From: Octopus bimaculoides
Taxonomy: Eukaryota
Reading direction: 5' to 3'
Length of the DNA: 64,000 bases
Assembly (NCBI RefSeq): GCF_001194135.2
Contig: NC_068994.1
Location: 41,457,657-41,521,656 of the forward strand
Shown in pieces: positions 3,346 through 60,003 of this stretch. The notes beneath the pieces are model-generated. The model was not told where the DNA came from and made no database searches. It was given only the letters and a program-made list of their open reading frames with translations. Numbering within the stretch: the first letter of the stretch is position 1; every line of letters starts with the position of its first letter. The position numbers and the translations under genes are program-made.

Positions 3346-4099
3346 GTTGAGAAACTTGGTCTAAATACTTGCAACAGAAAGGGTTGCATTAAAGGCACAC
3401 ATAAGCCTGGTGGTGGAACTAAAGTGTGTGATGCTATTACCTTGTTTGTACTAAAAGGGCTAATATCAAAATTTTAACTGACATTTTAAAAAATATGCAG
3501 ATATATTGAACTGTTTGCAAACTGATATTGTGATAAAATAATTAAATGTCAACGAAAGAATAAACCAATATGATATGAATTGTAGAGTTAATATAGATTG
3601 AAACACTGATTTCAGTATCAAATGACAATAAATCTGAGTTGAGAATGTCAGAATATTTGTTTATATCACTAAAGAAATAAATTTAGATGAAAATTAAGAA
3701 ATTCATCATCATCACTATAGCACATAGAACATATAACAAGAATCTCACAAGCTTATAGTGAAGCCATTTTTCAGTCACTGGACCTGCAAGAAATAGCAGC
3801 CAAGGCTCACCCAAATCATAACCAATCAACTTAAAAAAAAACAGAAATTGTACATCAGGTAAGCATCGTCGTCATCGCTATCATTGTAGGTGGTGTCACT
3901 GTGGCATTATTGTTGTCATTGTCATTACCGTTGGGCTTCTTTAAGTAGCTGTGCACCAAATCACTCACAAGTCTTTGGCTGGCACTGGGCTATAGTAAAA
4001 GACACTTGCACATGCAGTGGTACTGAACCTGAAACCCCATGGCTGGGAAGCAAACTTCATAACCACGGTGCCATATATTATTACCTATATCCCTCTTAC

Positions 4100-4640
4100 T
4101 ACACAGAACCATTTGACTTTGTTTGCTACCCTTCATTCTTAATACTATCCTTTCTACCCACTTTCACATTGATAACTCTCAACCATATATCATCTCCATC
4201 TCTTTCTCTTTCTCTGGTCCTTCTCCTAACTACTGTACCATCGTTAATATTCTGCTGGTCTTCATCTTCCCATTTTTCTGCACTGACAGTCATTTCCTAC
4301 CTTGCACCAACTCATATATATCGTAGGTCATTTTCCCACTTTTTATACCCCATCCACTACATCCACTCTTCAACCCTAACCCAATTTGTACAGTTTCTAT
4401 CGGCTCTCCCCTACTTTTCCTGCTTATTAGCCCTCAGCACTTGTTCCTTATTAAATTCATTCCATCACCCATTATCCATTTTTAACCATCTCTTACTCTC
4501 CTGTACATTCTTCCAGCCTCTACCCACCTGTACTCCCCGTTCTCTTGTTCCCACTCTCTTTATGCACCCCATCCCCATTATTTTATCTCTTTCAAGCTCT
4601 AATCTGATTACTTACACCTTCTCTTCTGTAATATGAGTAG
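4100..4640 (+). mobile_element. Possible highly decayed Penelope-like RT thumb region
   Basis: Pyrimidine-skewed stretch giving FLPTFTL, TDSH, SFSHFL and RSLVPTLFMHP, weakly recalling HPxLKFT, KPTDSH, PFSQFL and RVPLVLTYHP in that order. Confidence 0.3.
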
Positions 4641-12499: not shown

Positions 12500-13126
12500 T
12501 TGGGTTTTTTTTTTCGCTTTTATTTATTCTTTCTTTTTTTTTTGAAGTTTTCGAGATGTACTTCAATTCTTTAGTTTGTTTTTTGTTTTTTTGTTGTTTT
12601 TTTTTTTCTTTCTTTAAGTATTGTAAAGAACTTCATCCATGCTGCCTTCAACTTATGAACTCCGTTAAAATAAAAGACGAAAAAATGTTTGTGAACATAA
12701 ACAAGTATTAGTGTTATGTACAAGTTATATCAAAGGCTATATCACTTTTTTTTCAATTTTTTTTTATAGTTATAGGTATTGTATAAAACATTGTCCTCCA
12801 TACATTTCAGATTTGATCAGAAAATTACATTTATAAGGCTGGGATAGTACAACATATGTTACAGGGTGAGTGCGTATGATATTTACACTGTATTGTTTGA
12901 ATGGAATGTATTAATGATATAGTTTGGCATACAGACAGAACAATATTATCAATATAGTAACAAAAAAAATGACAAGCTGGAAATATATATATTCTCAGCT
13001 TGTATCATATCTGGAACAGTATACCAATTATTTTTATCAACAACAATTTCATAGTGTTTGGCTTTATTGGGTGTTCTCTTTTAAACTTGTTTTAGGTAGA
13101 CTCTAAAGCAACTGAATATACATCTT
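12500..13126 (-). other. Candidate 3' UTR of the protocadherin
   Basis: Non-repetitive A/U-rich sequence after the TGA. Overlapping AATAAA hexamers (AATAAATAAA, minus strand) at 12519-12528. Confidence 0.35.
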
Positions 13127-13197
13127 TCATAAAGGTTTGATAACGGTTATAGGTTGTAGATTAGATCTGGGCTTGTTCACCAATGGAGTGCAGGAAT
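13127..13197 (-). CDS. Pcdh: Probable terminal coding exon of the protocadherin: (D)SCTPLVNKPRSNLQPITVIKPL*
   Basis: Very strong acceptor ccattctattttcttcttttacttcttcag|AT. Phase-1 joining gives GAT plus 22 codons and TGA at 13129-13127, followed by AU-rich UTR-like sequence. No homology check was possible. Confidence 0.55.
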
Positions 13198-13949
13198 CTG
13201 AAGAAGTAAAAGAAGAAAATAGAATGGTAAATAAATGATTTAAAACTAACTTTCTTAAGCAAAAAGATAGGTTTCAGAAAAGTTTTAATGAAAGTATTCA
13301 ACACTTTTACAGGAATTATACTTGTGACTCATCATATAGATGTTCTTATTTAATTACTTTCTTAAATGGATTTACTTTTTAATTTCAAAGATCTTGAATT
13401 TGTTAGAGAATCTCATAATGTTCTAAATATGAAAGTGAAAAAAAAAAAAATCTATAATCACTGTGAATATTTGGCTTCAGGAATTTTAAAGCTTGTGAGA
13501 GACAATTCCATAATTAAGGCAGTTCTATATTGAAGAAAAAATTATGTTTTGCAGTAACTAGCTGGATTTAAAGTTAATGGACAGACAAGATTGCAACGAA
13601 AGCACAGAAATAATATTGAAAGTTAATAATATTGAAAATTGGTAGATTATTTCATTAGCAATGGAATCACAGAGTTTGTAAGAGACTGAAAATGAACCAA
13701 TCAGAGAGTTCGAAGAGAAACTTAATTTTAGAGGGAAATTACAGAAGAATATTTTATTTTAGTTTCATGGTAATGAAGACAGAGAGCAAGACAGAAGAAG
13801 CAGAGGAGATATAAAACTGATAACCATTCTAAGTGAATCGCAATTTCATTGGAAAATGTTCTGCAACACACTATGGAAACTGAACTATCTGTAGTGTGAA
13901 CATAAATTACAGCTCGTGATACTATTCAATGAAGATAAACATAAAATTT

Positions 13950-14130
13950 ATAAATAGGTACAAGGACTCAAATTTTAACAGGGAAAAATAAATGATTATA
14001 CTAGCCCCAATATTTGTCTCACTGGTACCCTATTATTTTGACCCCAGTGGAGTGGGGTGAAAGGTTAAGGTAGCCTTGGAAAGATTTGAACTGAGGACTT
14101 AAGAAAACTAAACTAAGTAGCATAAGGCGT
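13950..14130 (-). mobile_element. SINE family B, diverged
   Basis: tacaaggactcaaatttt...actggtaccctattattttgaccccag...gatttgaactgagg. Confidence 0.65.
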
Positions 14131-16178
14131 TTTTTCCTGATACCCAGATAAAACTTCTAAATAACAGCAAATAGCAAAATCCTGATAAAAGACTGTGGCA
14201 GCATGACTGCTACTGTTCTTAGAGCATAGATTGTTGGAACAAGATATGTAGTACATCTTTTACTGTCTGCTGCAAGTGTAATTTGTAGCTGAAAGCTGAT
14301 GATGATGACAATGACGACGACAGCACTGATGAATGTACATACCAGAAAATGTAGATGGTAAAGTTGACAGGGCAATTGTTAATCATCTGAGAGATTAGAA
14401 GTTCATGTCCTTCTTATTACAAGCAGCATGCTTTGCCTATGGAACGACATTTTGCTTGCAGTCCCCAAGTGTATCAAGCTTTAAGTAAATACTATTTCAA
14501 CATACTTTAATAGTATGCTCAGAGGCACAGAAGTTAAATATGCTGTTGACTTTGCTATACTGAGTTCCGTTCCTCCTATAGAAAAAAAATTTCACCTTGG
14601 ATAGTCTGGCTCCATATTCAGGGAGAAATTAATCTTCAAATCATGGTGAATAACAAAACTGAAGAGTGATTCAGAAAGAATGGAAGAGCCCAACAATAGA
14701 AAATATTCTTATGTTGATATTCTTTACTCGATTTTAATAATTTTCTGAACACCACCTTTAAGTGTTTTAAGCCTATCATATCAACCCCAGCACATTTTAT
14801 AACTCTATCAAATGGTTAGGTGACCCTTTGATATGAAAGGGTGATTTGATAAATCATTTTACACAAACATAACGTGTGTGCGTGTGTGTGTGTGTATGTG
14901 TAGATATACATACATATAATATCTATATTTATTTTTATCTGTGTATATATATATGCATGTATATGTCTGTACATATGTATGTATATTTGTGTGTGCATGC
15001 ACGCATGTGTGTGTGTGTATATATATATATAACTATATGTATATAGTTGTGCACGAGTGTGTGTCATTTATTTAGACTGGTCAAATGCCCTGCTATTTTG
15101 AAGTTTACTCAATGTGTAGTTGATTCTTCAGACAAGATAACTCAAGTCATTTTCACAAAGTAGTATTCAAATTGGGGCCATTTTAGAAGCACTATCCACG
15201 CTGCTACACAGTAAGATCGAACCTGGAACCATGAGATTGTGAAGCAAACTTCTTAACCACATACACCTATGCTTGTGATTCACGATTGTAGCTATAACTG
15301 AAATAATTAATCCATTTACAGCAGTATCCTGTTGACATTTTTTCTCTGAACAAAATTATGCTTCAGCCTGAATTCAATTTTAAATCTTAATTCTAATAAG
15401 ATTAATTTTGCTTTATATTCTACACATTTGATTTGTGCTGATTCTTCTTCTAGATCAAAATCTATTTTAATGGATGCATGTGATCAGAAAGTGGGAGACA
15501 GTTGTTCTCACCAAACCAAATGTACAAGAATCATATTCTTTTTTTATTCTAGGTGTGTATGCACTTTATAAACAAAATACACCATTTCTTTTTCCTTTAA
15601 TCCATTTCAGTCTTTAGACTGCAGCCTTGCTGGGGCATCATCTTGAAAGGTTTACATCAGTGATTCTCTACCATTTTTCACCCACAGACCCTTTGATTCC
15701 TATTTTATTCAAATGGACCCTCATAACCATTTGATATTTGAAAAATCCTATTATATTTTTATAATTGATTATAATTAATTATAATCATTTATTAAGAATT
15801 GTATAAATAATTGTTAAAATATTTTGTGTATTGTAGAAGTATAATCAATTTATTGCCAATAAATTTTAACATCAAAATCCTATATGGACCCTCAACGATG
15901 ATGATGATGAGAAGGAAGAGAATGTAGATGATTATGATGATGATGATGACAATGGCGATTATGATGACAATGATGATGATGGCAACAAGGAAGAAGATGC
16001 AGATGATAATGATGACCGTGATCCTGATGATGATTATTATCTTTTTTCTTTTCTGTTTCATAGGTTCAGAGGTTTTCATTAGGTCAGCTGAGTCAGTTGT
16101 CCAGTAATTTAACTTCATGGATACATGGTAACTTTGCAAGCAGGGAAGTTAAAAATATACAGGTATTGAGTGACTCAC

Positions 16179-16329
16179 CTGGAATCTCTTCATACTCTCC
16201 GGAGTCACCTTCACTCCAACCATGTCCGAAATCAGTATGAGAAGACAGAGTCTCTCTCCTAAGACTTGGAATCATAAGTGTACTATCTTCTAGTATGCTG
16301 TCTGTAGTTGCTATTCGCTGGATACACAT
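16179..16329 (-). CDS. Pcdh: Protocadherin second coding exon, cytoplasmic: MCIQRIATTDSILEDSTLMIPSLRRETLSSHTDFGHGWSEGDSGEYEEIP
   Basis: Acceptor tattattttccttacttccag| is phase 0, matching the upstream donor. 151 nt open frame. Donor CCAG|GTGAGT is phase 1. The peptide resembles the acidic DSGxG-type motif of protocadherin tails (recalled similarity, not searched). Confidence 0.8.
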
Positions 16330-16459
16330 CTGGAAGTAAGGAAAATAATAAATTGGTGTAGAATAACATGCATGTGAGTGATGGGTAGAGGGAGTATCAG
16401 ATAGAAAAGGGTGATGTATGTACATAGGAGTGAAAAGAAAACCATGTGTGTGTGTGTGC

Positions 16460-16515
<56 letters not shown>

Positions 16516-16532
16516 TATATGTATATATGTAC

Positions 16533-17219
16533 NNNNNNNNNNNNNNNNNNNNNNNNNNNNNNNNNNNNNNNNNNNNNNNNNNNNNNNNNNNNNNNNNNNN
16601 NNNNNNNNNNNNNNNNNNNNNNNNNNNNNNNNNNNNNNNNNNNNNNNNNNNNNNNNNNNNNNNNNNNNNNNNNNNNNNNNNNNNNNNNNNNNNNNNNNNN
16701 NNNNNNNNNNNNNNNNNNNNNNNNNNNNNNNNNNNNNNNNNNNNNNNNNNNNNNNNNNNNNNNNNNNNNNNNNNNNNNNNNNNNNNNNNNNNNNNNNNNN
16801 NNNNNNNNNNNNNNNNNNNNNNNNNNNNNNNNNNNNNNNNNNNNNNNNNNNNNNNNNNNNNNNNNNNNNNNNNNNNNNNNNNNNNNNNNNNNNNNNNNNN
16901 NNNNNNNNNNNNNNNNNNNNNNNNNNNNNNNNNNNNNNNNNNNNNNNNNNNNNNNNNNNNNNNNNNNNNNNNNNNNNNNNNNNNNNNNNNNNNNNNNNNN
17001 NNNNNNNNNNNNNNNNNNNNNNNNNNNNNNNNNNNNNNNNNNNNNNNNNNNNNNNNNNNNNNNNNNNNNNNNNNNNNNNNNNNNNNNNNNNNNNNNNNNN
17101 NNNNNNNNNNNNNNNNNNNNNNNNNNNNNNNNNNNNNNNNNNNNNNNNNNNNNNNNNNNNNNNNNNNNNNNNNNNNNNNNNNNNNNNNNNNNNNNNNNNN
17201 NNNNNNNNNNNNNNNNNNN
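16533..17219. other. Assembly gap (others near 28388-28440, 39421-39623, 51646-51768, 53173-53182, 54029-55016, 59864-60003)
   Basis: Runs of N, almost all flanked by (TA)n/(TG)n. Confidence 0.99.
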
Positions 17220-17237
17220 CCATGTGTGTGTGTGTGC

Positions 17238-17293
<56 letters not shown>

Positions 17294-18769
17294 TATATGT
17301 ATATATGTACAAACACATATATCTATATCTATGTATCTCTTACCAGTAGTCACCCATGCATACCAGCCTCCCCCTCTCCATTCCATCGATGTTATCCAAG
17401 GGAAAGACAAAGGCCAATACAACTTGGCACCAGTGACATTACATAACATTAGTTATGCCTTTGTATTGCTTCTGTAACAAACTTTTACTCTCTTTGAAAT
17501 AAGAACTTCCACTTCTTTAAGATGTTTCAACAAGTATTTTTTAATATTCCTTTTTGGCCCACTTGTTCTACCTCTCTTCACTCTTCCTCTTGTTTGTATT
17601 TAACACTCAAAAGCACTTTGTTATTAAGTATGTTTCTTCTACTACCTTCTGTATTCACTCCCTTTACATATTATAGTATTTTCTGATCGTATTAAGTAGA
17701 TCACTTAGTCTTTGATTCAGTTATGTAGTTACATACAGCGTTTCACCACTCTGGTTAGCATGCTGTTTCCTGTCATGCTATTTACAAGTTCTGCAGTAAA
17801 TGTATTGGTGTTAGAAAAGTAAGATCTTGGATATATTTCATTTTAATATTGTCTTACTGGATCATTCTTTAACAAATTCCAGCCCCAAACTTATACTGTC
17901 TCTCTCTTCTGAAAGTTATGTTGTAATCTAGATTATACATTTGAATAAAAACCACCATCACCATCACCACCATGAACAAGAACAACAATGACAGCAACGA
18001 CATCATTTTTATGTCCATGTTCTAAGTTGGCACGAGTTAGATGGGCCATCATGGTTTGTGTCAGTTCTTATAGAGCAGGGGCCACTTCCCTTGCAGATGA
18101 GTTAGAAGATCATTCCTTGCTTATGTGTTTCAATTTTAGCTTGACATCAACTGCTAGATTCCATTCCTATCACCAGTTGGGCAAAATGCTCGACAACATT
18201 TCTTGTGGATTTACATTCTGAGTTGAAATGCCACTGTGATTGACTTTACATTTCATCCTTTTGGAGTCAATAAAATAAGTCCCAATATCTAGGCTTTGCT
18301 AAAACTTAGAATTAATTATAGCATGGTCAGAAATCCTTCCTCTTGTTGACTTGTAACTGGGTTAGAAATTCAAATTATTAAAAAGTTATTGCCACAGCAA
18401 CAAATACAGCATTTATGGATTCCTTGTACTACATTAATGGTATTTACATTTGCTAATTGAGTAAATTTATTTAAGCTCTTCAATTAACTGTTGCTGGATT
18501 TTGTAACATTAAACACAACCAAGTCTTTCTTTAGTTAAATTATTTACAATGAGGAAGTGGTATCAAGTATCTAAATTAACTGTCTTTGTCTATCAGAAGG
18601 AGCTAAATTTGTTTTAGAAAATGAATATTCATAATGACTTTATTATATATTGAATAGTTTAATGACAGATAAATTTTACATTGACTCAAAGCTACACATT
18701 TATATGAAAATGGTAAAGTTGGTAGAATGGGTTTAATAAATTTTTCTAATTTAGGCACATGACCAGCAA

Positions 18770-18965
18770 TTGATAAACAAAGGGAGCTACTCAATTACAT
18801 TGACCCTAATACTTGACTGGTACATCATTTTATCCAACCCAGATCAATCAAAGGCGAAGTTTATATCACAGCAGAAATTGAATTTTAAATGGCAACAGTC
18901 AGAAAGAAATACTGGAAAGCATTTTATCTGTTGCCCTAACAACTTTGCCAATCTGTCACCCTATT
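18770..18965 (-). mobile_element. SINE family B, diverged
   Basis: tacattgaccctaatacttgactggtac...aaaggcgaagttt...gcagaaattgaa...ctaacaactttgccaatctgtcacc. Confidence 0.7.
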
Positions 18966-20254
18966 GATTTCAGTAAATGACTGGAAGTTATTTTATCGAC
19001 CTGGGTTGGCAGAAAGGAAAGATGAGTCAAAAATGATGTGAATGCATTTGAAATACCATGTTTTTTTTTTGTTTTTTCTTTAGCATTAAGTGAATCAGAG
19101 ACAAACACCGTCTTAAATAAGATCCATGGATATCACAAGTAACATTTCCTGAAGAACTGACACTTACTTCTCCCATTGCATAGTGAATAGAGAAACAGAT
19201 TTAAGTGCCTTGCACAGAGACAAAATAACATTCCTGGAAGCAGAGTAGAACTCATAAAAACCTATGAACTGCAAAGTCAATATGTAATCCACTTAGATAC
19301 TAGTTTAATATTTCTACTGACATTTTATACCTGTCATAAAATATGATTTCTTACATAAGCATAAGGCCCGAGATATAGCATAACCACTTAGATCAATTCC
19401 TCTACTTGCTTGCTACTTTATTTCATTGACCCAGGAAGGATGAGAAGTGAAGTTGGCCTTGAATATAACAATAATTATACTTTCTATTATTAATATCCTT
19501 TATATAGTTGATCTAATTAACCCTTTTTCTTCATCAACTGTGAAATCTTTCTCTTAGAAACTTTGAACTATAATTTGTTTCAATTTCTTCTAAAATGTAT
19601 TTTTTATTTATTTATTTATGTGTTTCAGCCAAGTGGCTGCGGTCATGCTGGTGCACCACAAACATTTCTAAATATCAAAAGTTTCCTGGTATAGTTTATA
19701 TCAGATAACTTTATATTTTCATTGTTTTTTTGCTTGTAAAATATGGTTCAACTTTATTTCTTTACAGGATATGGCTGCATGGCATGTGATTACAGGAAAT
19801 AGAACCACACAAAAATATGATGTGATATAATATAATATAACATAATATAATATAATGTAATATGATATAATATAATATGATATATTATAATATGATATAA
19901 TATAATATAATATAATATAATATAATTTAACATAATGGATGATGATATATAGAACAACAGATAGTTGTATAAAAGCCAAATTAATTCTTAAGTTGGTTAA
20001 GTTTATATGTGTTAGAAAAAGAAGAATTAACAGTTTCAGGAATGATTCTTCATTTGAGTTAACTCATTATTTTTAAGGTCCATAAGCACCTAAAAAGATG
20101 GTTCTGTATGCAAGCACAGATACACACCAATACTGTAACTCTTATTCAAATGATTTGTAGCATGTACTATGTGTTCATTAATTGTTTTAGGTATTTAGGT
20201 AGTTGTGAGTAAACACAGTCATCCTCAAGGCTCTATCCTCTTGACCCAGTAAAA

Positions 20255-20420
20255 CATCCAAGATATTACAATTAGGGGGGAAAGGAAAAACGTACCAGCA
20301 TCCAGCTGGTACTCTTTTCAACTCAGTAACTTGAAATGAAGAACCTTGCTCAAGGACACAATGTTCTACACGATCCCAGAAGCAAACCCACGACATTATG
20401 ATCATGAGCTCAACATACTG
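20255..20420 (-). mobile_element. SINE family C fragment immediately downstream of the large coding exon
   Basis: gaaatgaagaaccttgctcaaggacacaatg...acgacattatgatcatgagc matches the reverse complement of the family C head and core. Confidence 0.6.
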
Positions 20421-20465
20421 ACTACTAAATCAAAACAATTTTATAACAAAGGATGATATCCTTAC

Positions 20466-22853
20466 CTGAGTAGTTGCTGGTAATGTTCTGGATGAAGAGG
20501 AATCCCAGTCGTTTTGTGATTCAACATCTGGATAAAGCTGACTGCGTGATCTAAACATCTGGCTACTTCTTATGTCATCTGGACTTCTTAATGTTACAAT
20601 AGAATTACTAGTCTCTGATATTAAGTTCCTCTTTTCTCTACAAAACTTATTCATATGATTTAATTTTGCCCCATGAGAGGTATTTTTCAAATTGTTGTAT
20701 CTCACAACACAAGCTGTTATGAAAATAACAAGAGCCACTGATAATATTACTGCTACAACAACAATAACAATGGCTAAATTAAGATTTATCATTCCATCTG
20801 TTTGTTTGTATGTTGCAGTGAGCATTTCTGATGTGTTATTGCTTAATATGACTTTCAAAGACAGTGTAGTTGTTGCTGATAGTGTGGGAGTACCATTATC
20901 TTTGACAGCTACTTTTAGCCTGTATGTCCCAGCATCAGTTTGGTAAATTGGACGAGAGAATGACAAGTGACCAGTGTAAGGATTCACTTTGAACATCAGC
21001 TTGTCATCTCCTCCCACTATTTCATACCTGAGAAAAGCATTCATTCGACTGTCTCTGTCAGAAGCTTTCAGAACAGTAATATTATTCTTTGACTGAGGAT
21101 GATAAAAAATATCAAGACTGAAAGGATTAATGTTAGGGAAAACAAAATATGGAGCATTGTCATTTTCGTCCATAACTTCAACAATAACATTTGCTGTGTT
21201 GTTTAAAGAAGGAATTCCGTTGTCTTTTACTAAAACTTTAAATTTATAAATTTCTTTTTGTTCACAATCTAATGTTCTTGTAGTTGATATAAAACCATTT
21301 TTTGTAATTTTAAAAGGAAGGTAATTTTTATTGCTTTCTAATAAGGAATAAGTTAACTCTCCTCCAACTCCAGTGTCTTGATCAGTGGCATTAATAAAGC
21401 CAATTGGAAAATTTGGTTTCTGATTTTCGTAGGTCAAAAATTTGAAGGTTTGTTTTGAGAACTGTGGCCTTAAATCATTGACATCTAATACTTGAATTGA
21501 GAACTTGCTCTCTGTTTTTAAGGGTGGGGTACCTTTGTCTTGACAAGATATTGTGATATCATAATTGTCTTCTTTCTCCCTATCAACAGCTTGTTTTACA
21601 ATTACTTTATATTCTTTGGACCCTAAACTTAAAAGCTGAAAAGTTTTATGCTTTAGATCACAAATGACTTCACCATTCTTTCCAATATCATTATCAGTAA
21701 CCATTACATAAGCAATGAAACTGCCAATTTTGATATCTTCAGAAATAGCCACTCTGTTTTCAGTTAATGCACTCACAAAGTTCACATCAATATTTGGTGC
21801 ATTGTTTTGTTGGTTCACCACATAAACAACAACCATTGCAATTGAACTCAAAGGAGGTCGTCCTCCATCAGTAGCTCGAATGAATAGCTTATGAACCAAC
21901 GTTTGACCCAATGCAAATATCTTTTGTAGGAAAATTTCTCCAGTTCGTTTATTGAGTTTAAAGTGATCTTTAGCAATATCTGATGTTTTCAGTGTAAAAT
22001 GATAAGTGATATTTGCATTTTCTCCAGTGTCCATATCTTTAGCTGAGAGAACAACAATAGGGGCTTCTTGATGTAATTCATTTTTTATTGAAACATTGTA
22101 GATATTCTGTGAGAAAATAGGAACATTATCATTGACATCAGTAACTGATATCTTTACACCTAGAATACTTTGTTTTGTAGGATATCCTCCATCTTTTGCA
22201 ATTACTTGAAGTGAATAAATATCTTTTACTTCTCGATTTAGTCGTTCTCCTAAATTGATGGACAATTCTGAGGTGCCATCCAGGTTCTTAGAAACTGTTA
22301 ATGTAAATGGCTCATCTTTCTTTTTCTTTAACTGATATGTAATCTGTGAATTCAAAAGCCCTACGTCTTTATCTACAGCATTAGGTAATGATCTTCTGGC
22401 TCCTTTGCTATCATCTTCAGAAAATTCTATTGTTATTTCTTTCTTTTGAAATTGAGGTTTATGGTCATTAATATCTTCTAATATTATCTTGATTTTAAGT
22501 ATTTTCATAAATGTTTCAGCTCTTTTAACTGCAACTTTCACTATCCTGAAACATTCTGTGTTGTACATACAAAGAGACTCAGCATCCAGCTTTCTAGCAG
22601 TAAATAATTTTCCTGTCTTTGAAACATTGAACAGCCCTGAACTTTTGGTTGTGCTATGCTGAAGTTGACTAAATGTAATCAAATGGTGATCCTCCAGATG
22701 TACATTGTGTAGCAAATGTGAATCCGATGCAATATCTCCTAAAAAGCTTCCTTCACTCTTTTCCTCCTCCACATGGTAGGTGAGGTCGACGCAGGTGGAG
22801 ATTGAAACCAGACACAACAATGTCCACAGAGTTACCAGTGTATTATGACTCAT
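20466..22853 (-). CDS. Pcdh: Protocadherin, large first coding exon (796 codons): signal peptide, EC1-EC6, TM helix, proximal cytoplasmic tail. Family-level call only.
   Basis: ATG at 22853 gives MSHNTLVTLWTLLCLVSISTC (signal peptide) then VDLTYHVEEEK. Six cadherin repeats with linkers DINDH, DVNDN, NQQNN, DVNDL, DENDN, plus DxD and xDxG motifs. EC1 has C-X5-C (CMYNTEC). TM is LNLAIVIVVVAVILSVALVIFITACVV. Exon ends at CAG|GTAAGG (phase 0) at 20466. Confidence 0.95.
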
Positions 22854-22902
22854 TACTGCTACAACTTTTGATAAGATGCTAATCTCAAAACATCCCAGGC
22901 AT

Positions 22903-22925
22903 CTGAAAGAAAAGAAGAAAAATAT
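22903..22925 (-). promoter_or_regulatory. 3' splice acceptor preceding the large coding exon; implies an upstream non-coding exon
   Basis: Minus strand tttcttcttttctttcag|ATGCCTGGG, 50 nt upstream of the signal-peptide ATG. The ORF-track N-terminal extension (IIFFFFSF, from a TTG) is this pyrimidine tract. Confidence 0.8.
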
Positions 22926-24407
22926 TATTTTTAAAGTAAACAGTAACAAGTAAAGAAATTAAATATCATTATTACTATAAACTATCTCTATAATTCAGTT
23001 TGCATATTATTTAGCTATTAGTCAACACTGACTGAGCAGACTTATGATCAGTATTCCAGCCATGATCATCTCATCTCTGTACCTAGGGCTACAATATCCA
23101 ATGTAACATTTCATTTTATTAAATAGCAGATAGTGATTTGAGAAATATTTGGCTGCTAATTCTGCAAAAACTTCTTTGTTGGTTTGTGAAGAACTTGGTT
23201 GTGGTCCTCCAGATATATACTTAACCCTCATTTCTAGCTGTGACCACCCTAACTTTTCCTTTTGTGCAGGGAACTGGGGACAACATCATTCAATGTATGC
23301 TGTGATTTGAGAGAGAGAGATTTGGTTGCTATTTTTAGCAAACTGTGTGACAATGAAGTAACTCCCTTGTTGGCTTGTGAAGAGTGTAATTGCTTAGAGC
23401 ATTAGAATGAATCCTTTTATACATGAATCAATGGCACTCTACTGACCTGCGACTATTCAATAAAGAATTAATCTTCTTGAATGTAAAATACTATCAACTG
23501 AGAAAAATCTGTGCTAATGCAATTAGCTGTTGATTATTTATTTTTTTGAGGAAAATGAATTCTAAGTGAAACCAGTGATATTGAGTGATGTCTAGAGTTT
23601 GTGTCTTCTCTCTATGTTTCTGTTATTGATGAAGCCTTACTAGAATAGAAAGCCAAATTATTTCTATACAAGATTTGCAAAGTAAAGTTTTAATTCTATA
23701 ACCAACTAAGCCATTTCAAATAAAGTAAAGTTTGGATATGCTTATCTAAATATATCATCAGACACTCTTTACAATAACAAAAAACATGACTTCTGTCAGG
23801 GTTGTTGCAGCAACATTATAAGACTTCAAGCAAAGCAATGCACTAGAGTCCCCTACATTCACACAACTAGAGCATACATAGATCAGTATGGAGCCTCCTT
23901 AGGTCCATGAGGTGCCTTGCACTGAAAACTACCCTTGTGTTCATGCTTTAAGACAGCACTAGCTTCCAAGCCTAACCATGTAGGTGGATGAACTTCATAA
24001 AGGACATACATTTGCCAAGTTAATGAAAAACTAGACCAGTACAAAGCTGATTTAGATGAGGATCAGTTGTGATTTAGGTGGGGGCCTAACATCTCTTGCA
24101 TTGTGGACTATCTCTTTCTGGAAATGTAAGATGCTGAAGAAGAGAGAACTATTAACCAACTGTTAACCCTCTACTGTACTCTCAATTTCAAATGGATCTA
24201 GGACAACTGATGGCAGCCAATTACCTTCAGCTCAACTCACTGCAGCGAACTAGCTGCTACTAACTCAATGCTGATATTAGAAATAAGACAACATGCTATG
24301 ATATAGAAAAACTAATTTTTCTTTAATTAAAATTCTGTGTTATGAAATAAGTCTCATAAACTCTTTATTAATGTTAAAACTAATGCAATAGGTTTTAAAA
24401 TAGTATC

Positions 24408-56632: not shown

Positions 56633-57686
56633 GTATCTATATATATTTATATATATATATATATATATACACACACATATACATACATATATATATACAT
56701 ACATATATGTATATGCATGTATAATATATACATATATATGTATGCTAGCATGGAAAGCGGACGTTAAACGATGATGATGATGATATTTATATTTATACAC
56801 ACACACACACACATATTCATACATATACATTTATGCACATATACATGTATGACCTCTCTCTCTCACACACATACACACACATGCTCAGATGCGTGCACAC
56901 ACATACATACATACATATGTATATATGCAAAAACTGTAACAAGATATTTTTGTTTTTTTTTGTTTTTAGTATTGCTATTTTGAAATTAATTTTTCACAAG
57001 TTTTGTAAGAGTGTTTTGAAATATACATGAATAAAGTATTAAGTATCTTTTCAATATTTTTAAAAATTAACAAAATGAAATTTGCTCAAATTTATTTCAT
57101 TTACTTCACTCTTCGATTGATACCAAAATGAAAATAAGCATAATTTTTCAAGTGTCTTAAATTTTCAAATCTTGTTTTCATCTTATATTAAATATGTGAT
57201 GCTATTTCAGAGATTCACACACATTCACACACAAACACAGGCACACACACATATGCACACACAGAGGCATATTTAAGCATTTGCATGCATCTGTGCATAT
57301 GTGTGTGCGTATGTGTGTGTGTGTGTGTGTGTGTGTCTGTGCACATACAGTTATACCTATGCATATTTCAGTGTGAATGGGAATCTGTTGAAGCGTATCA
57401 TATATTCTAAAGCCTAAGAAAGAAGTTCTTTGCTTACTGGGACCTTTCCTGAAACTTTTTTTCATACATACACGCTCACACACACACATACACACACAAC
57501 ACACAGATACACAAATAAGCAAACACGTACAAACACACATTCGAATGCATTTATCTATGCATGTATTAAATCCTTATCTACATGTTTATACATATATATA
57601 TATATATTTCAAATTAACATCTTTAAATTATATATATATATATATGTATGTATGTATGTATGTATATGCGTGTGTGCGTATATGAA

Positions 57687-57731
<45 letters not shown>

Positions 57732-57934
57732 GTATATGTATATATATGTATATGTATATATATGTATATGTATATATATGTATATGTATATATGTATATG
57801 TATATATGTATATATGTATATGTATATATGTATATATGTATATATATATGTATATATATATATGTATATATATATATGTATATATATATTATATATATAT
57901 TATATATATATATATGTATATATATATATGTATA

Positions 57935-57966
<32 letters not shown>

Positions 57967-58114
57967 TCCATATACACTATATATATGTATGTAAATGTGT
58001 GTGTACACATACAGACACACAGACACATAAATATATATATATATATATATATATTCCATATGCACTATATATATGTATGTAAATTTGTGTGTACACATAC
58101 AGACACACAGACAC

Positions 58115-58152
<38 letters not shown>

Positions 58153-60003
58153 GTGTACATACATATATGTGTGTGTGTGTGTGTGGGAAGTTATTAGTAT
58201 ATGTATATATATATATATTTGTATGTTTATATAAATTACCTTATAGTTCCAAACAAATGGGAAGTACGTATATCCTACCTGCATTACATTATCCATTGGA
58301 ATTTTCTGCCGTGTAAAATAGTTTTCCTGTTGGTGAGAGTTCTTCCGTGACTGGCTGTCTTGTGTGTGACAACAGAATTATGTCGGTGAGTGTGTATAAG
58401 CATGTGTGTATGTGTGTAAATCTCTATTTGTGCCATCTATACTGATGTGTCTGTATGCATTAGATTGATGCACGCTTCAGCAACTGACTGGTTGAATGGA
58501 GTTTGTTGTGGTGGTGAAGAATGCAATTGGTTCTTTCTCTGCTTCACTTACCTAGGCAGCCTTCACATGTCTGTTCTGTGCTGCAGTGTGCTGCTCCGAT
58601 ATTCATATATACCCAACGTCATCCTACACCCACTCCACCCACCCATCCATACATTCAATAACATACTCTGATATCTCTATGAATATTCAATAATGACATT
58701 GTCTTTACAAAAATTGACACCCCACCGTCCGCCCACCGCACTTTCACAGAGGCAAAATGTGTTGCTAAAAATAGTTTTGGGTATAGATTTACGCAAAAAT
58801 CCAATATTTAATCAGAAAGAGAATCATGTTTCTTCTAACAAAAATCCATTCACCACTTGTGTCTGACCTGATATTTTATAAGCTTCCCAAACTCTTATTC
58901 ACTGGATAACTATAACTTAGAGTAAAGAAAATGTTTCCAACAAGCCTGAAAGTGGGTCAAAAATTCGCCACCTTGCAGCTGTTTGTTACCTCACTGATTG
59001 AGATTTAAAAGGGAGAAAAAAAAATTTAACTCAGAAAATAATTTAGATCAATTTTCTGAATAATAAAAGTGAAAAAGATATGAGGAAAGAAGTAAAACAA
59101 TAATGAAAGAAAGAAGTGAAAAAGAAGAAGAAACCTGCTACATCCAAAGATTAAGTCATTGATTTTTCAGCACTGAAGCATCTTTTTTCTCTTCTTTCAC
59201 TATTTTAGTTGTTTCCATAGATTTTATTCACTTGGGCCAATTTATTTCTTTAAAGTGCTTAAGCTACAGTAAAATTCTTGCATATTTATTCTTCATTTGA
59301 TAACATGTGTGCAACAAACACACAAAAATGCATCCTCGTGTGCATGCACATGCAGATGCACATGTACACACTTACACAAAACATGTGCACGCACAAATAT
59401 GTACACATGCACGCACAAACACACACACTCTCGCACTCACATAGAGTAAGTGGCAGAAACAGTACTGTGAAATTTCCGCAACACAGGCCACCACCAGCTC
59501 CTAGGATTCAGTTTCATCTAATACACACATATAAATATATAGTTACAGACACACATGCATATATATATATGTATGTATGTATATATGTATATATATTTAT
59601 ATATACATATATAGATATACATATACATATATGCTAATATCTGCACACACACCCTCAATATATATATACATATACATACACACACACATACACACACACA
59701 CATACACACACACAAATATATATATATATATATATACATACATTTCTATGTATATATGTATGTATGCATATAGATACATACATAAATGCCTACATGTATA
59801 TATGTATATGTATATGTGCATATGTGTGTGTCTATCTATATATATATATACACACATATATATNNNNNNNNNNNNNNNNNNNNNNNNNNNNNNNNNNNNN
59901 NNNNNNNNNNNNNNNNNNNNNNNNNNNNNNNNNNNNNNNNNNNNNNNNNNNNNNNNNNNNNNNNNNNNNNNNNNNNNNNNNNNNNNNNNNNNNNNNNNNN
60001 NNN

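What the first reader, a model, noticed from the sequence alone, without database searches (positions are those of the whole stretch)
16179..16329. Hidden cytoplasmic exon with a canonical YEEI Src-SH2 docking motif
Seen: RRET-L-SS-HTDFGHGWSEGDSGE-YEEI-P, with YEEI at 16194-16183. Established: pYEEI is the classic high-affinity Src-family SH2 ligand, acidic residues N-terminal to Tyr favour Src-type kinases, and RRxT is the PKA consensus. Inference: this is a signalling module on its own exon, analogous to vertebrate constant exons or the CM1 motif. DFG may be a divergence from DSG. One A-to-I edit (TAT>TGT) would delete the tyrosine.
Basis: partly seen in the sequence, partly recalled or inferred. 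Interest (0 to 1): 0.7.

Follow-up and report, generated by a model that had tools for sequence, protein, structure and literature searches.

The report
Conserved tyrosine motif exon, octopus protocadherin
This is a real, already annotated small exon of an Octopus bimaculoides protocadherin gene, and its YEEI tyrosine motif is kept in nearly every octopus protocadherin paralogue examined, so it is probably a working signalling or sorting signal, though that has not been tested.

Summary
On the minus strand, 16329..16179 is a 151-nt exon with canonical splice sites, and YEEI lies at 16194-16183. RNA contigs from eight runs of three octopus species join 20466 directly to 16329, then 16179 to a third exon at 13197.

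The exon is not hidden. The spliced 869-aa protein is identical to RefSeq XP_014785611 (protocadherin beta-16, O. bimaculoides).

The exon is not a shared constant exon. Each paralogue carries its own diverged copy.

One YEEI in the window is no more than chance (0.48 expected). Conservation is the evidence:
- Of 41 octopod paralogue groups, 40 keep Tyr, 41 keep Glu at +1, and all have E/T at +2 and almost all I/L at +3.
- The upstream DSGHGWSEGD core is less conserved in octopods.
- Decapodiform-like sequences keep that core but lack the tyrosine.
- No non-cephalopod relative and no Pfam family was found.

The function is inferred. A phosphotyrosine SH2 docking site is the best fit, because QYEEIP matches the classic Fyn/Src ligand. 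A YxxΦ sorting signal is the main rival.

Paralogues have isoforms without the module. In one paralogue the only difference between the mRNA-derived and genome-derived proteins is Tyr to Cys at this tyrosine, which hints at RNA editing. No such change was seen in this gene.

The parts
20466..22853 (-). Exon 1 coding part. It encodes the signal peptide, cadherin repeats, the TM segment and the first 79 cytoplasmic residues. The donor is CAG|gtaagg after 20466 (phase 0).
   Evidence: ORF and sequence. Pfam Cadherin E=2.4e-73 and Cadherin_2. tblastn of P0001 aa 1-799. RNA contigs with 0 differences.
20703..20783 (-). Transmembrane segment LNLAIVIVVVAVILSVALVIFITACVV (aa 691-717), which places everything downstream in the cytoplasm.
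   Evidence: Hydrophobic stretch read from the translation. The topology is inferred from the signal peptide plus a single TM segment.
16330..20465 (-). Intron 1 (GT..AG). It contains a (TA)n/(CA)n microsatellite and an assembly gap (N run 16533-17219).
   Evidence: RNA depth is about 0 at 20408-20461.
16179..16329 (-). Exon 2 (the finding), 151 nt, phase 0 in and phase 1 out. It encodes MCIQ...GEYEEIP plus the first base of the next codon.
   Evidence: RNA contigs of 8 runs cover exactly this interval and join exon 1 and exon 3. It is identical in the RefSeq protein.
16249..16260 (-). RRET (AGG AGA GAG ACT), a candidate basophilic kinase site.
   Evidence: Sequence. Kept in the Argonauta orthologue as IRRETL but not in paralogues.
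16204..16233 (-). Module core D-F-G-H-G-W-S-E-G-D. The family consensus is D-S-G-H-G-W-S-E-G-D. Here TTC (F) stands where relatives have Ser.
16180..16194 (-). Y-E-E-I-P (TAT GAA GAG ATT CCA), the last full codons of the exon. The A at 16193 is the base whose A-to-G change would give Cys.
   Evidence: Conservation is Y 40/41, E 41/41, E/T 41/41, I/L 39/41 and P 29/41 octopod paralogue groups.
13198..16178 (-). Intron 2 (GTGAGT..CAG). It contains an (ATC/ATG)n-type simple repeat near 15900-16060.
13127..13197 (-). Exon 3 coding part. It completes the Asp codon, then encodes SCTPLVNKPRSNLQPITVIKPL and the stop TGA (13129-13127).
   Evidence: The loose end of exon-2 contigs matches 13197-13168 exactly. 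Sequence. Contigs join 13200 to the end of exon 2.
12505..13126 (-). 3' UTR, at least this far. It includes a highly repeated element at about 12562-12623.
   Evidence: RNA contigs are continuous from 13200 down to 12505-12642.

Best explanation
Shown. The interval is exon 2 of a three-exon protocadherin gene of Octopus bimaculoides (protocadherin beta-16, 869 aa). It encodes 50 residues of an apparently unstructured cytoplasmic tail, about 80 residues after the membrane. The exon is one private copy of a module that coleoid protocadherin genes each carry on their own small 3' exon.

In octopods the end of the module, Y-E-[E/T]-[I/L]-P-[G/A], is the most conserved part of the tail. The less conserved core [S/T]-S-x-x-D-S-G-H-G-W-S-E-G-D lies upstream. 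The exon boundary falls one base after the Pro codon, and what follows (exon 3) varies between paralogues.

Inferred mechanism. The tyrosine is phosphorylated by a cytoplasmic tyrosine kinase. The resulting pY-E-E-I-P docks an SH2 domain of the Src-family type (pY-E-E-I preference), coupling protocadherin engagement to tyrosine-kinase signalling. The unphosphorylated form may additionally be read as a YxxΦ sorting signal, giving a phospho-switch. In paralogues the module is removable by alternative splicing, and perhaps by A-to-I recoding of Tyr to Cys. This gene itself was seen only in the full form.
For: Exon and splicing:
- establish the exons and junctions.
- Identity to RefSeq is shown.

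Conservation:
- Among named Octopus and Argonauta sequences, 41 paralogue groups reach the tyrosine column. Y is kept in 40/41, E at +1 in 41/41, E/T at +2 in 41/41, I/L at +3 in 39/41 and P at +4 in 29/41.
- Upstream core positions are kept in only about 35-60% of groups (sequences).
- An invariant Glu at +1 and E/T at +2 go beyond what a bare YxxΦ signal requires, and they match the Src-family SH2 preference pY-E-E-I (established knowledge, Songyang et al. 1993).
- Many paralogues read QYEEIP, the same hexapeptide as in EPQpYEEIPIYL, the cognate Fyn SH2 ligand.

Context:
- AlphaFold2 on the 51-sequence alignment gives no secondary structure (pTM 0.16, mean pLDDT 62). This fits a linear motif rather than a fold.
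- Vertebrate Pcdh-alpha tails interact with Fyn, as cited in PMC6339937.
- All ten paralogue clusters examined have isoforms with and without the module.
- The O. vulgaris mRNA-derived QBA31128.1 differs from the genome-derived protein at one residue of 852, Y843C at the motif tyrosine.
Against: - No phosphorylation or binding data exist.
- Sequences that group with the cuttlefish Acanthosepion pharaonis keep DSG[HR]GWSEGDTG and x-E-E-[M/V/I]-P-G, but have S, R, A, I, G or C in place of Tyr. The acidic-hydrophobic tail is therefore conserved without any phosphotyrosine in part of the family.
- The motif occupies the last 15 nt of the exon. GAA GAG (purine-rich) and CCAG|GT may be partly constrained by splicing signals.
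- Residues before the Tyr (Q/H/L/P at -1) are not the Src-kinase substrate optimum.
- YEEI, YEEL and YETL also satisfy YxxΦ and the core LIR pattern.
- The Y-to-C difference is a single observation and could be a SNP or an assembly error.
Confidence: 0.42

Rival explanations
1. Tyrosine-based sorting signal. The unphosphorylated Y-E-E-I is a YxxΦ motif bound by the mu subunit of AP-2, AP-3 or AP-1. It controls endocytosis or endolysosomal delivery of the protocadherin, and phosphorylation is irrelevant or merely inhibitory.
For: All octopod variants (YEEI, YEEL, YETL, YEEV) fit Y-x-x-[ILV]. The motif lies in an unstructured tail. The review PMC7339444 reports that trafficking of vertebrate protocadherins depends on the cytoplasmic domain and that they are largely endosomal. 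Acidic residues at +1/+2 occur in lysosomal YxxΦ signals such as GYEVM and GYEQF (from memory, Bonifacino & Traub 2003).
Against: YxxΦ does not require the invariant Glu at +1, E/T at +2 or Pro at +4 that are observed. Decapodiform-like relatives lack the Tyr altogether.
Confidence: 0.3
2. LC3-interacting region. G-E-Y-E-E-I acts as an acidic [W/F/Y]-x-x-[I/L/V] LIR that links the tail to Atg8-family proteins.
For: The sequence fits the core LIR pattern with flanking acidic and serine residues. Vertebrate gamma-protocadherins colocalise with LC3 in a way that depends on the cytoplasmic domain (PMC7339444).
Against: LIRs more often use W or F. The invariant Glu at +1 and Pro at +4 are not LIR features. 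There is no supporting data, and decapodiform-like relatives lack the aromatic residue.
Confidence: 0.06
3. No tyrosine-specific function. The conservation reflects the neighbouring DSGHGWSEGD core (for example a phosphodegron-like DSGxxxS serine cluster) together with nucleotide-level constraints of the 5' splice site and a purine-rich exonic enhancer. On this view YEEI is a by-product.
For: The core is the part shared with decapodiform-like sequences, which also keep E-E-Φ-P-G without Tyr. The motif sits on the last 15 nt of the exon, GAAGAG..CCAG|GT. DSGxxS-type motifs are beta-TrCP degrons (PMC13097077).
Against: Splice signals do not explain a TAT/TAC codon kept in 40 of 41 octopod groups while the adjacent -1 position varies freely among H, Q, L, P and others. 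In octopods the core is much less conserved than the tyrosine. This gene has lost the first Ser of DSG yet keeps YEEIP, also in Argonauta.
Confidence: 0.12
4. Shared 'constant' exon, as in vertebrate clustered protocadherins, spliced to several upstream variable exons.
For: Only the general layout fits: a large ectodomain exon followed by small tail exons.
Against: Every RNA contig joins 16329 to 20466 only. The window holds a single protocadherin gene. Paralogues carry their own diverged exon-2 copies, for example L002 with its own exon 6.7 kb downstream of its exon 1. PMC9068888 states that cephalopods do not splice multiple first exons to shared final exons.
Confidence: 0.01

Closest known systems
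pYEEI Src-family SH2 ligand (hamster polyomavirus middle-T peptide EPQpYEEIPIYL)
   Same: Y-E-E-I-P is identical. Many octopod paralogues share the whole hexapeptide QYEEIP. It lies in a cytoplasmic, unstructured context.
   Different: No evidence that the octopus tyrosine is phosphorylated or bound. A quarter of paralogue groups have T at +2 or L at +3. Decapodiform-like relatives lack the Tyr.
Constant exons of vertebrate clustered protocadherins (Pcdh-alpha/gamma)
   Same: A large first exon encodes the ectodomain, TM segment and proximal tail, and small 3' exons encode the distal cytoplasmic tail. The vertebrate alpha tail interacts with Fyn.
   Different: The exon is not shared. Each octopus gene has its own copy, diverged to 24-51% identity between paralogue groups. 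No sequence similarity was detected, and Pfam gives no match for the tail.
Conserved cytoplasmic motifs CM1/CM2/CM3 and WIRS of vertebrate delta-protocadherins
   Same: Short conserved motifs in otherwise divergent tails, encoded by 3' exons and present or absent in alternative isoforms (PMC7339444).
   Different: Styfhals et al. found no CM1-3 in octopus by pattern search. Pfam and the exhaustive profile search found no vertebrate match. A resemblance of DSGHGWSE to delta-protocadherin 'DSG[KR]GDS[DE]' is only my recollection and was not tested.
YxxΦ tyrosine-based sorting signals
   Same: Y-x-x-[I/L] in the cytoplasmic tail of a type I membrane protein.
   Different: Extra invariant positions (+1 Glu, +2 E/T, +4 Pro) are not part of that signal.

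Membership tests
Protocadherin (the gene to which the exon belongs) | Signal peptide, tandem extracellular cadherin repeats encoded by one large exon, single TM segment, non-catenin-binding tail | tested here: met
   Pfam Cadherin E=2.4e-73 (5 stretches) and Cadherin_2. One 2.4-kb exon. 100% identity to RefSeq protocadherin beta-16 of O. bimaculoides.
Src-family SH2 docking site (pYEEI class) | Sequence Y-E-E-I (pY, acidic +1/+2, Ile/Leu/Val +3) in a cytoplasmic, accessible segment | tested here: met
   YEEI at 16194-16183, downstream of the TM segment. No predicted fold.
Src-family SH2 docking site (pYEEI class) | Tyrosine conserved among orthologues and paralogues | tested here: met
   Identical in O. 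sinensis, O. vulgaris and Argonauta. Y in 40/41 octopod paralogue groups. Not kept in decapodiform-like sequences.
Src-family SH2 docking site (pYEEI class) | Tyrosine is phosphorylated in vivo | not testable with these tools
   No phosphoproteome is available here.
Src-family SH2 docking site (pYEEI class) | Phosphopeptide binds an SH2 domain of the same organism | not testable with these tools
   Needs binding assays. The presence of Src-family kinases in octopus was assumed from general knowledge and not checked.
Vertebrate-type protocadherin constant exon | One exon spliced to many alternative upstream variable exons | tested here: not met
   A single junction partner (20466) in 8 RNA runs. 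One protocadherin gene in 64 kb. Paralogues have private copies. PMC9068888.
Delta-protocadherin CM1/CM2/CM3 | Sequence similarity to the vertebrate motifs | tested here: inconclusive
   No Pfam hit for the tail at E<=1. No vertebrate hit in the exhaustive profile search. Published pattern search was negative. No direct profile-profile comparison with delta-protocadherin tails could be made.
YxxΦ sorting signal | Y-x-x-bulky hydrophobic residue in a cytoplasmic tail | tested here: met
   YEEI, YEEL and YETL in all octopod groups that have the Tyr.
YxxΦ sorting signal | Binding to an adaptor mu subunit, with Tyr-dependent internalisation | not testable with these tools
   Needs experiments.
A-to-I recoding site at the Tyr codon | G in RNA where genomic DNA has A (16193 on the minus strand) | tested here: inconclusive
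   Contigs of 8 RNA runs show the genomic letter, but contigs drop minor variants and no raw-read run was available. There is no unusual local RNA structure (z=+1.23). A paralogue shows Y843C in an mRNA-derived sequence.

The most novel reading that the evidence does not exclude
The whole octopod protocadherin expansion (40 of 41 paralogue groups sampled) shares one near-invariant phosphotyrosine docking site, Y-E-[E/T]-[I/L]-P. It is absent from squid and cuttlefish relatives. It sits on an exon that many paralogues can skip, and at least one paralogue erases it by A-to-I editing (Tyr to Cys). Octopus neurons could then tune, by splicing and editing, whether a given protocadherin couples to Src-type kinases. 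This would be a lineage-specific and convergent counterpart of the vertebrate Pcdh-alpha/Fyn link.
Probability: 0.2. Interest if true: 0.75.

Novelty: new member of a known kind. Interest (0 to 1): 0.5.

Why it matters
Published work on octopus protocadherins reports no vertebrate-like intracellular motifs, and the motifs it lists are extracellular, transmembrane, or a generic PP1 pattern (PMC6339937 and its Table S2). How this 168-gene family signals inside the cell is therefore open.

A tyrosine motif kept in almost every octopod paralogue, identical to the textbook Src/Fyn SH2 ligand, gives a concrete and cheap hypothesis to test. The tests would use phospho-specific detection, SH2 and adaptor pull-downs, and Y-to-F tails.

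The split between octopods (Tyr kept) and decapodiform-like sequences (core kept, Tyr absent) offers a natural comparison. The apparent Tyr-to-Cys recoding in a paralogue, if confirmed, would be an example of editing that switches a signalling motif off.

The gene and exon themselves are ordinary and already annotated.

Tried and rejected
- **Tail-only homology search.** The 152-aa query found nothing, although an identical tail is in the database. I take this as a limit of the word index, not as absence.
- **Reads across both exons.** I used short stretches and the loose ends of contigs instead.
- **Reads on the paralogue locus L002.** The aim was to test the Tyr-to-Cys change.
- **Pfam on the tail.** No family.
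- **Exhaustive profile search.** It returned only cephalopod tails plus three spurious hits (P0138, P0141, P0157). No relative outside cephalopods is detectable at this sensitivity.
- **RNA folding round the exon.** Not more stable than shuffles, so there is no support for a local editing duplex.
- **AlphaFold2 of the module.** No fold.
- **Literature.** No paper in the library holds both 'YEEI' and 'protocadherin'. Albertin et al. 2015 is not held. Searches for the delta-protocadherin strings I recalled found nothing useful, so the CM1 comparison stays untested. My recollection that a DSGRGDS-type degron exists in PDCD4 could not be verified.
- **Nucleotide identity of exon 2 across three species.** It is perfect, but this is not significant: exon 1 differs by 27/1434 between organisms A and D, so about 2.8 differences were expected in 151 nt.
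- **Species of the decapodiform-like Logan/ENA sequences.** These could not be read. Their assignment rests on one named cuttlefish protein (P0145) and on grouping with Acanthosepion proteins.

Full report
**1. What is at the coordinates**

On the minus strand, 16329..16179 is a 151-nt open segment. A polypyrimidine tract and ...cttccag precede it, and gtgagt follows it. In the frame that stays open it reads MCIQRIATTDSILEDSTLMIPSLRRETLSSHTDFGHGWSEGDSGEYEEIP. TAT GAA GAG ATT lies at 16194-16183 and the tyrosine codon's A is at 16193.

Four kilobases upstream on the same strand lies an 839-codon ORF (22949..20430). It encodes a signal peptide, cadherin repeats and a transmembrane segment. It contains a donor, ACT CAG|gtaagg, after 20466 in phase 0.

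**2. The exon is real and spliced as predicted**

RNA-derived contigs from four runs of the window's species cover exactly 16179-16332. The three extra letters, CAG, are shared by the intron end and the end of exon 1.

Their overhang on one side is the reverse complement of the last bases of exon 1. On the other side it is a sequence that matches the window once, at 13197-13168. That place is a third exon, ttcttcag|ATTCCTGC. It completes an Asp codon, adds SCTPLVNKPRSNLQPITVIKPL and stops at 13129-13127. A 3' UTR reaches at least 12505.

Two further runs of the same species, one of organism D and one of organism B, give the same two junctions and no other partner. Depth in the intron next to 20466 is about zero.

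**3. It is not hidden**

The spliced product is 869 aa. It is identical over its whole length to XP_014785611.1, XP_014785612.1, XP_014785613.1 and XP_052829062.1, 'protocadherin beta-16 [Octopus bimaculoides]'. The window is therefore O. bimaculoides.

The O. sinensis and O. vulgaris proteins differ at 12-13 positions, all within residues 14-503 (the ectodomain). The Argonauta hians protein is 91% identical overall. Against Argonauta, exon 2 matches at 46/50 residues and exon 3 at 22/23, and GEYEEIPDSCTPLVNK is unchanged.

**4. One exon per gene, not a constant exon**

tblastn finds only this one protocadherin gene in the 64-kb window.

Other octopod protocadherins have an exon-2-like segment of their own. 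It aligns with this one but shares only 24-51% identity between paralogue groups.

For one paralogue, XP_014784425, the genomic locus was fetched. Its own exon 2 lies 6.7 kb downstream of its own exon 1, and the neighbouring gene ends just upstream.

Albertin et al. 2022 state that cephalopods do not splice multiple first exons to shared final exons (PMC9068888). The analogy with vertebrate constant exons therefore holds only for the general layout.

**5. Is YEEI more than chance?**

Alone, it is not. The window's six-frame translation contains one YEEI, against 0.48 expected from shuffles. The evidence is conservation.

I built a 53-position profile from 51 exon-2 modules (A1). Among sequences named by NCBI as Octopus or Argonauta, 41 paralogue groups reach the tyrosine column:

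| Position | Residue | Groups |
|---|---|---|
| Tyr | Y | 40/41 (one Lys group) |
| +1 | E | 41/41 |
| +2 | E / T | 33 / 8 |
| +3 | I / L / V | 21 / 18 / 1 |
| +4 | P | 29/41 |
| +5 | G, A, D or V | all G-initial codons |

The +5 pattern fits the conserved exon boundary one base after the Pro codon. Another group has F-D-D-L and one has lost the module.

The -1 position varies freely among H, Q, L, P and others. The upstream core D-S-G-H-G-W-S-E-G-D is kept at only 35-60% per position.

The tyrosine motif is thus the most conserved element of octopod protocadherin tails.

**6. The wider family**

An exhaustive profile search of 1.84 billion representative proteins returned 42 hits at E<=0.001. 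Apart from three spurious ones, all are cephalopod protocadherin tails or short ORFs that are exon-2 copies read from genomic contigs. Pfam has no family for the tail.

One subset groups with cuttlefish proteins rather than octopus ones. It includes one protein named from Acanthosepion pharaonis. These sequences keep [S/T]SSH[T/A]DSG[H/R]GWSEGDTG very well, and keep x-E-E-[M/V/I]-P-G. At the tyrosine position they have S, R, A, I, G or C.

So the core is pan-coleoid, and the tyrosine is specific to octopods or was lost in decapodiforms. The species of most of those sequences could not be read, so this split is provisional.

In the present gene the first Ser of D-S-G is Phe (TTC), also in Argonauta.

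RRET is kept in orthologues only.

**7. Isoforms and a possible edit**

In all ten paralogue clusters examined, RefSeq lists isoforms that contain the module. It also lists shorter ones in which exon 1 is joined to other terminal sequences, so the module is skipped. For the present gene only the full form was seen.

One paralogue gives a striking result. The O. vulgaris protein QBA31128.1 derives from the transcriptome of Styfhals et al. The genome-derived protein is CAI9732486.1 / XP_029645236.1. The two differ at one residue of 852, and that residue is Y843C, the motif tyrosine (GQYEELPG to GQCEELPG). This is an A-to-G type change.

It is a single observation in a paralogue, and a SNP or an assembly error is not excluded. 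I could not lay reads on that locus.

In the present gene, contigs of eight RNA runs show the genomic letter at 16193. Contigs drop minor variants. The local pre-mRNA folds no better than shuffles.

**8. How it most likely works**

AlphaFold2 on the alignment predicts no secondary structure, so the module is best read as a set of short linear motifs.

Three known motif classes fit Y-E-E-I. They are an SH2 ligand after phosphorylation, a YxxΦ adaptor signal, and an LC3-interacting region.

I favour the SH2 reading (about 0.4). The invariant Glu at +1, E/T at +2 and frequent Pro at +4 exceed what YxxΦ needs. They match the Src-family preference. Many paralogues carry QYEEIP, the hexapeptide of EPQpYEEIPIYL, the cognate Fyn SH2 ligand. 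Vertebrate Pcdh-alpha tails interact with Fyn.

The sorting signal is a serious rival (about 0.3). Protocadherin tails govern endosomal trafficking in vertebrates. The two readings could also coexist as a phospho-switch.

Two points count against any tyrosine-centred reading. Decapodiform-like sequences keep E-E-Φ-P-G without Tyr. The motif also lies on the last 15 nt of the exon, where purine-rich enhancer and donor-site constraints act. Those constraints do not explain the Tyr codon itself.

Phosphorylation, binding and editing are all inferred and not shown.

**9. Comparison and novelty**

The gene, the exon and the protein are already in RefSeq.

The family-wide conservation of the tyrosine motif appears not to have been described:
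- No paper in the library holds both 'YEEI' and 'protocadherin'.
- Styfhals et al. report no vertebrate CM1-3 motifs. They list only extracellular, TM and generic PP1 patterns as octopus-specific.
- Albertin et al. 2015 and Wang & Ragsdale 2017 could not be read, so earlier mention in their supplements cannot be excluded.

I file it as a new member of a known kind: a conserved tyrosine-based linear motif in a receptor tail.

Noticed in passing
P0024 versus P0183 (paralogue; O. bimaculoides copy at L002:12238-12240): The mRNA-derived O. vulgaris protocadherin QBA31128.1 differs from the genome-derived protein at a single residue of 852, Y843C. This is exactly the motif tyrosine and is an A-to-G type change. 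It is a candidate A-to-I recoding event, or else a SNP or assembly error.
   Followed up: partly
Paralogue clusters of P0004, P0005, P0011, P0014, P0017, P0019, P0021, P0076, P0086 and P0024: RefSeq lists isoforms both with and without the exon-2 module for every cluster examined. These arise by exon skipping, an internal donor, or alternative terminal exons. In paralogues the module therefore behaves as an optional cassette.
   Followed up: partly
window 16324-16326 (second codon of exon 2, TGT); alignment: The second residue of exon 2 alternates between Tyr (about 22 sequences) and Cys (about 16, including this gene) among paralogues. This is an A/G difference at the middle codon base, the pattern expected where an edited A is replaced by a genomic G. 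It may also be coincidence.
   Followed up: no
Exon-1-only ORFs of decapodiform-like sequences (e.g. P0053, P0066, P0102, P0146): Their exon 1 ends with a conserved [D/E]-[V/I]-[I/V/M]-Y-[Q/E] immediately before the donor. In P0146 the spliced product reads ...EVIYEEIEGD across the junction, so another Tyr-acidic motif sits at a different place in that lineage.
   Followed up: no
Long octopod isoforms (e.g. P0041, P0087, P0101, P0112, P0136): A second conserved C-terminal element, D-[V/I]-I-[D/N]-L-K-S ... W-N-L-P-x-[R/K]-N-S-F-[T/S]-S-[Y/F]-[S/A]-K-P-L-P-x-[V/L]-P-K, lies beyond the module. The present gene has only a short tail ending ...VIKPL.
   Followed up: no
P0003 (1504 aa), P0182 (1785 aa), P0347/P0349 (about 1718 aa): These database models run from the YEEIPG module of one protocadherin straight into the N-terminus of the next (…HYEEIPGVSDLTYHVEEE…). 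They are probably fusions of tandem neighbours made by annotation, though read-through transcripts are not excluded.
   Followed up: no
window 12562-12623: A short segment of the 3' UTR has RNA contig depth up to about 3,800, against about 52 for the rest of the transcript, and many unrelated contigs end there. It looks like a dispersed repeat embedded in the UTR.
   Followed up: no
window 16430-17320 and 15900-16060: Intron 1 holds a (TA)n/(CA)n microsatellite around an assembly gap (N run 16533-17219). Intron 2 holds an ATC/ATG-type simple repeat.
   Followed up: partly
window 3890-4636 (+) and 57430-58197 (+): Two ORFs of about 250 codons have no Pfam match. Their nature was not determined.
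   Followed up: partly
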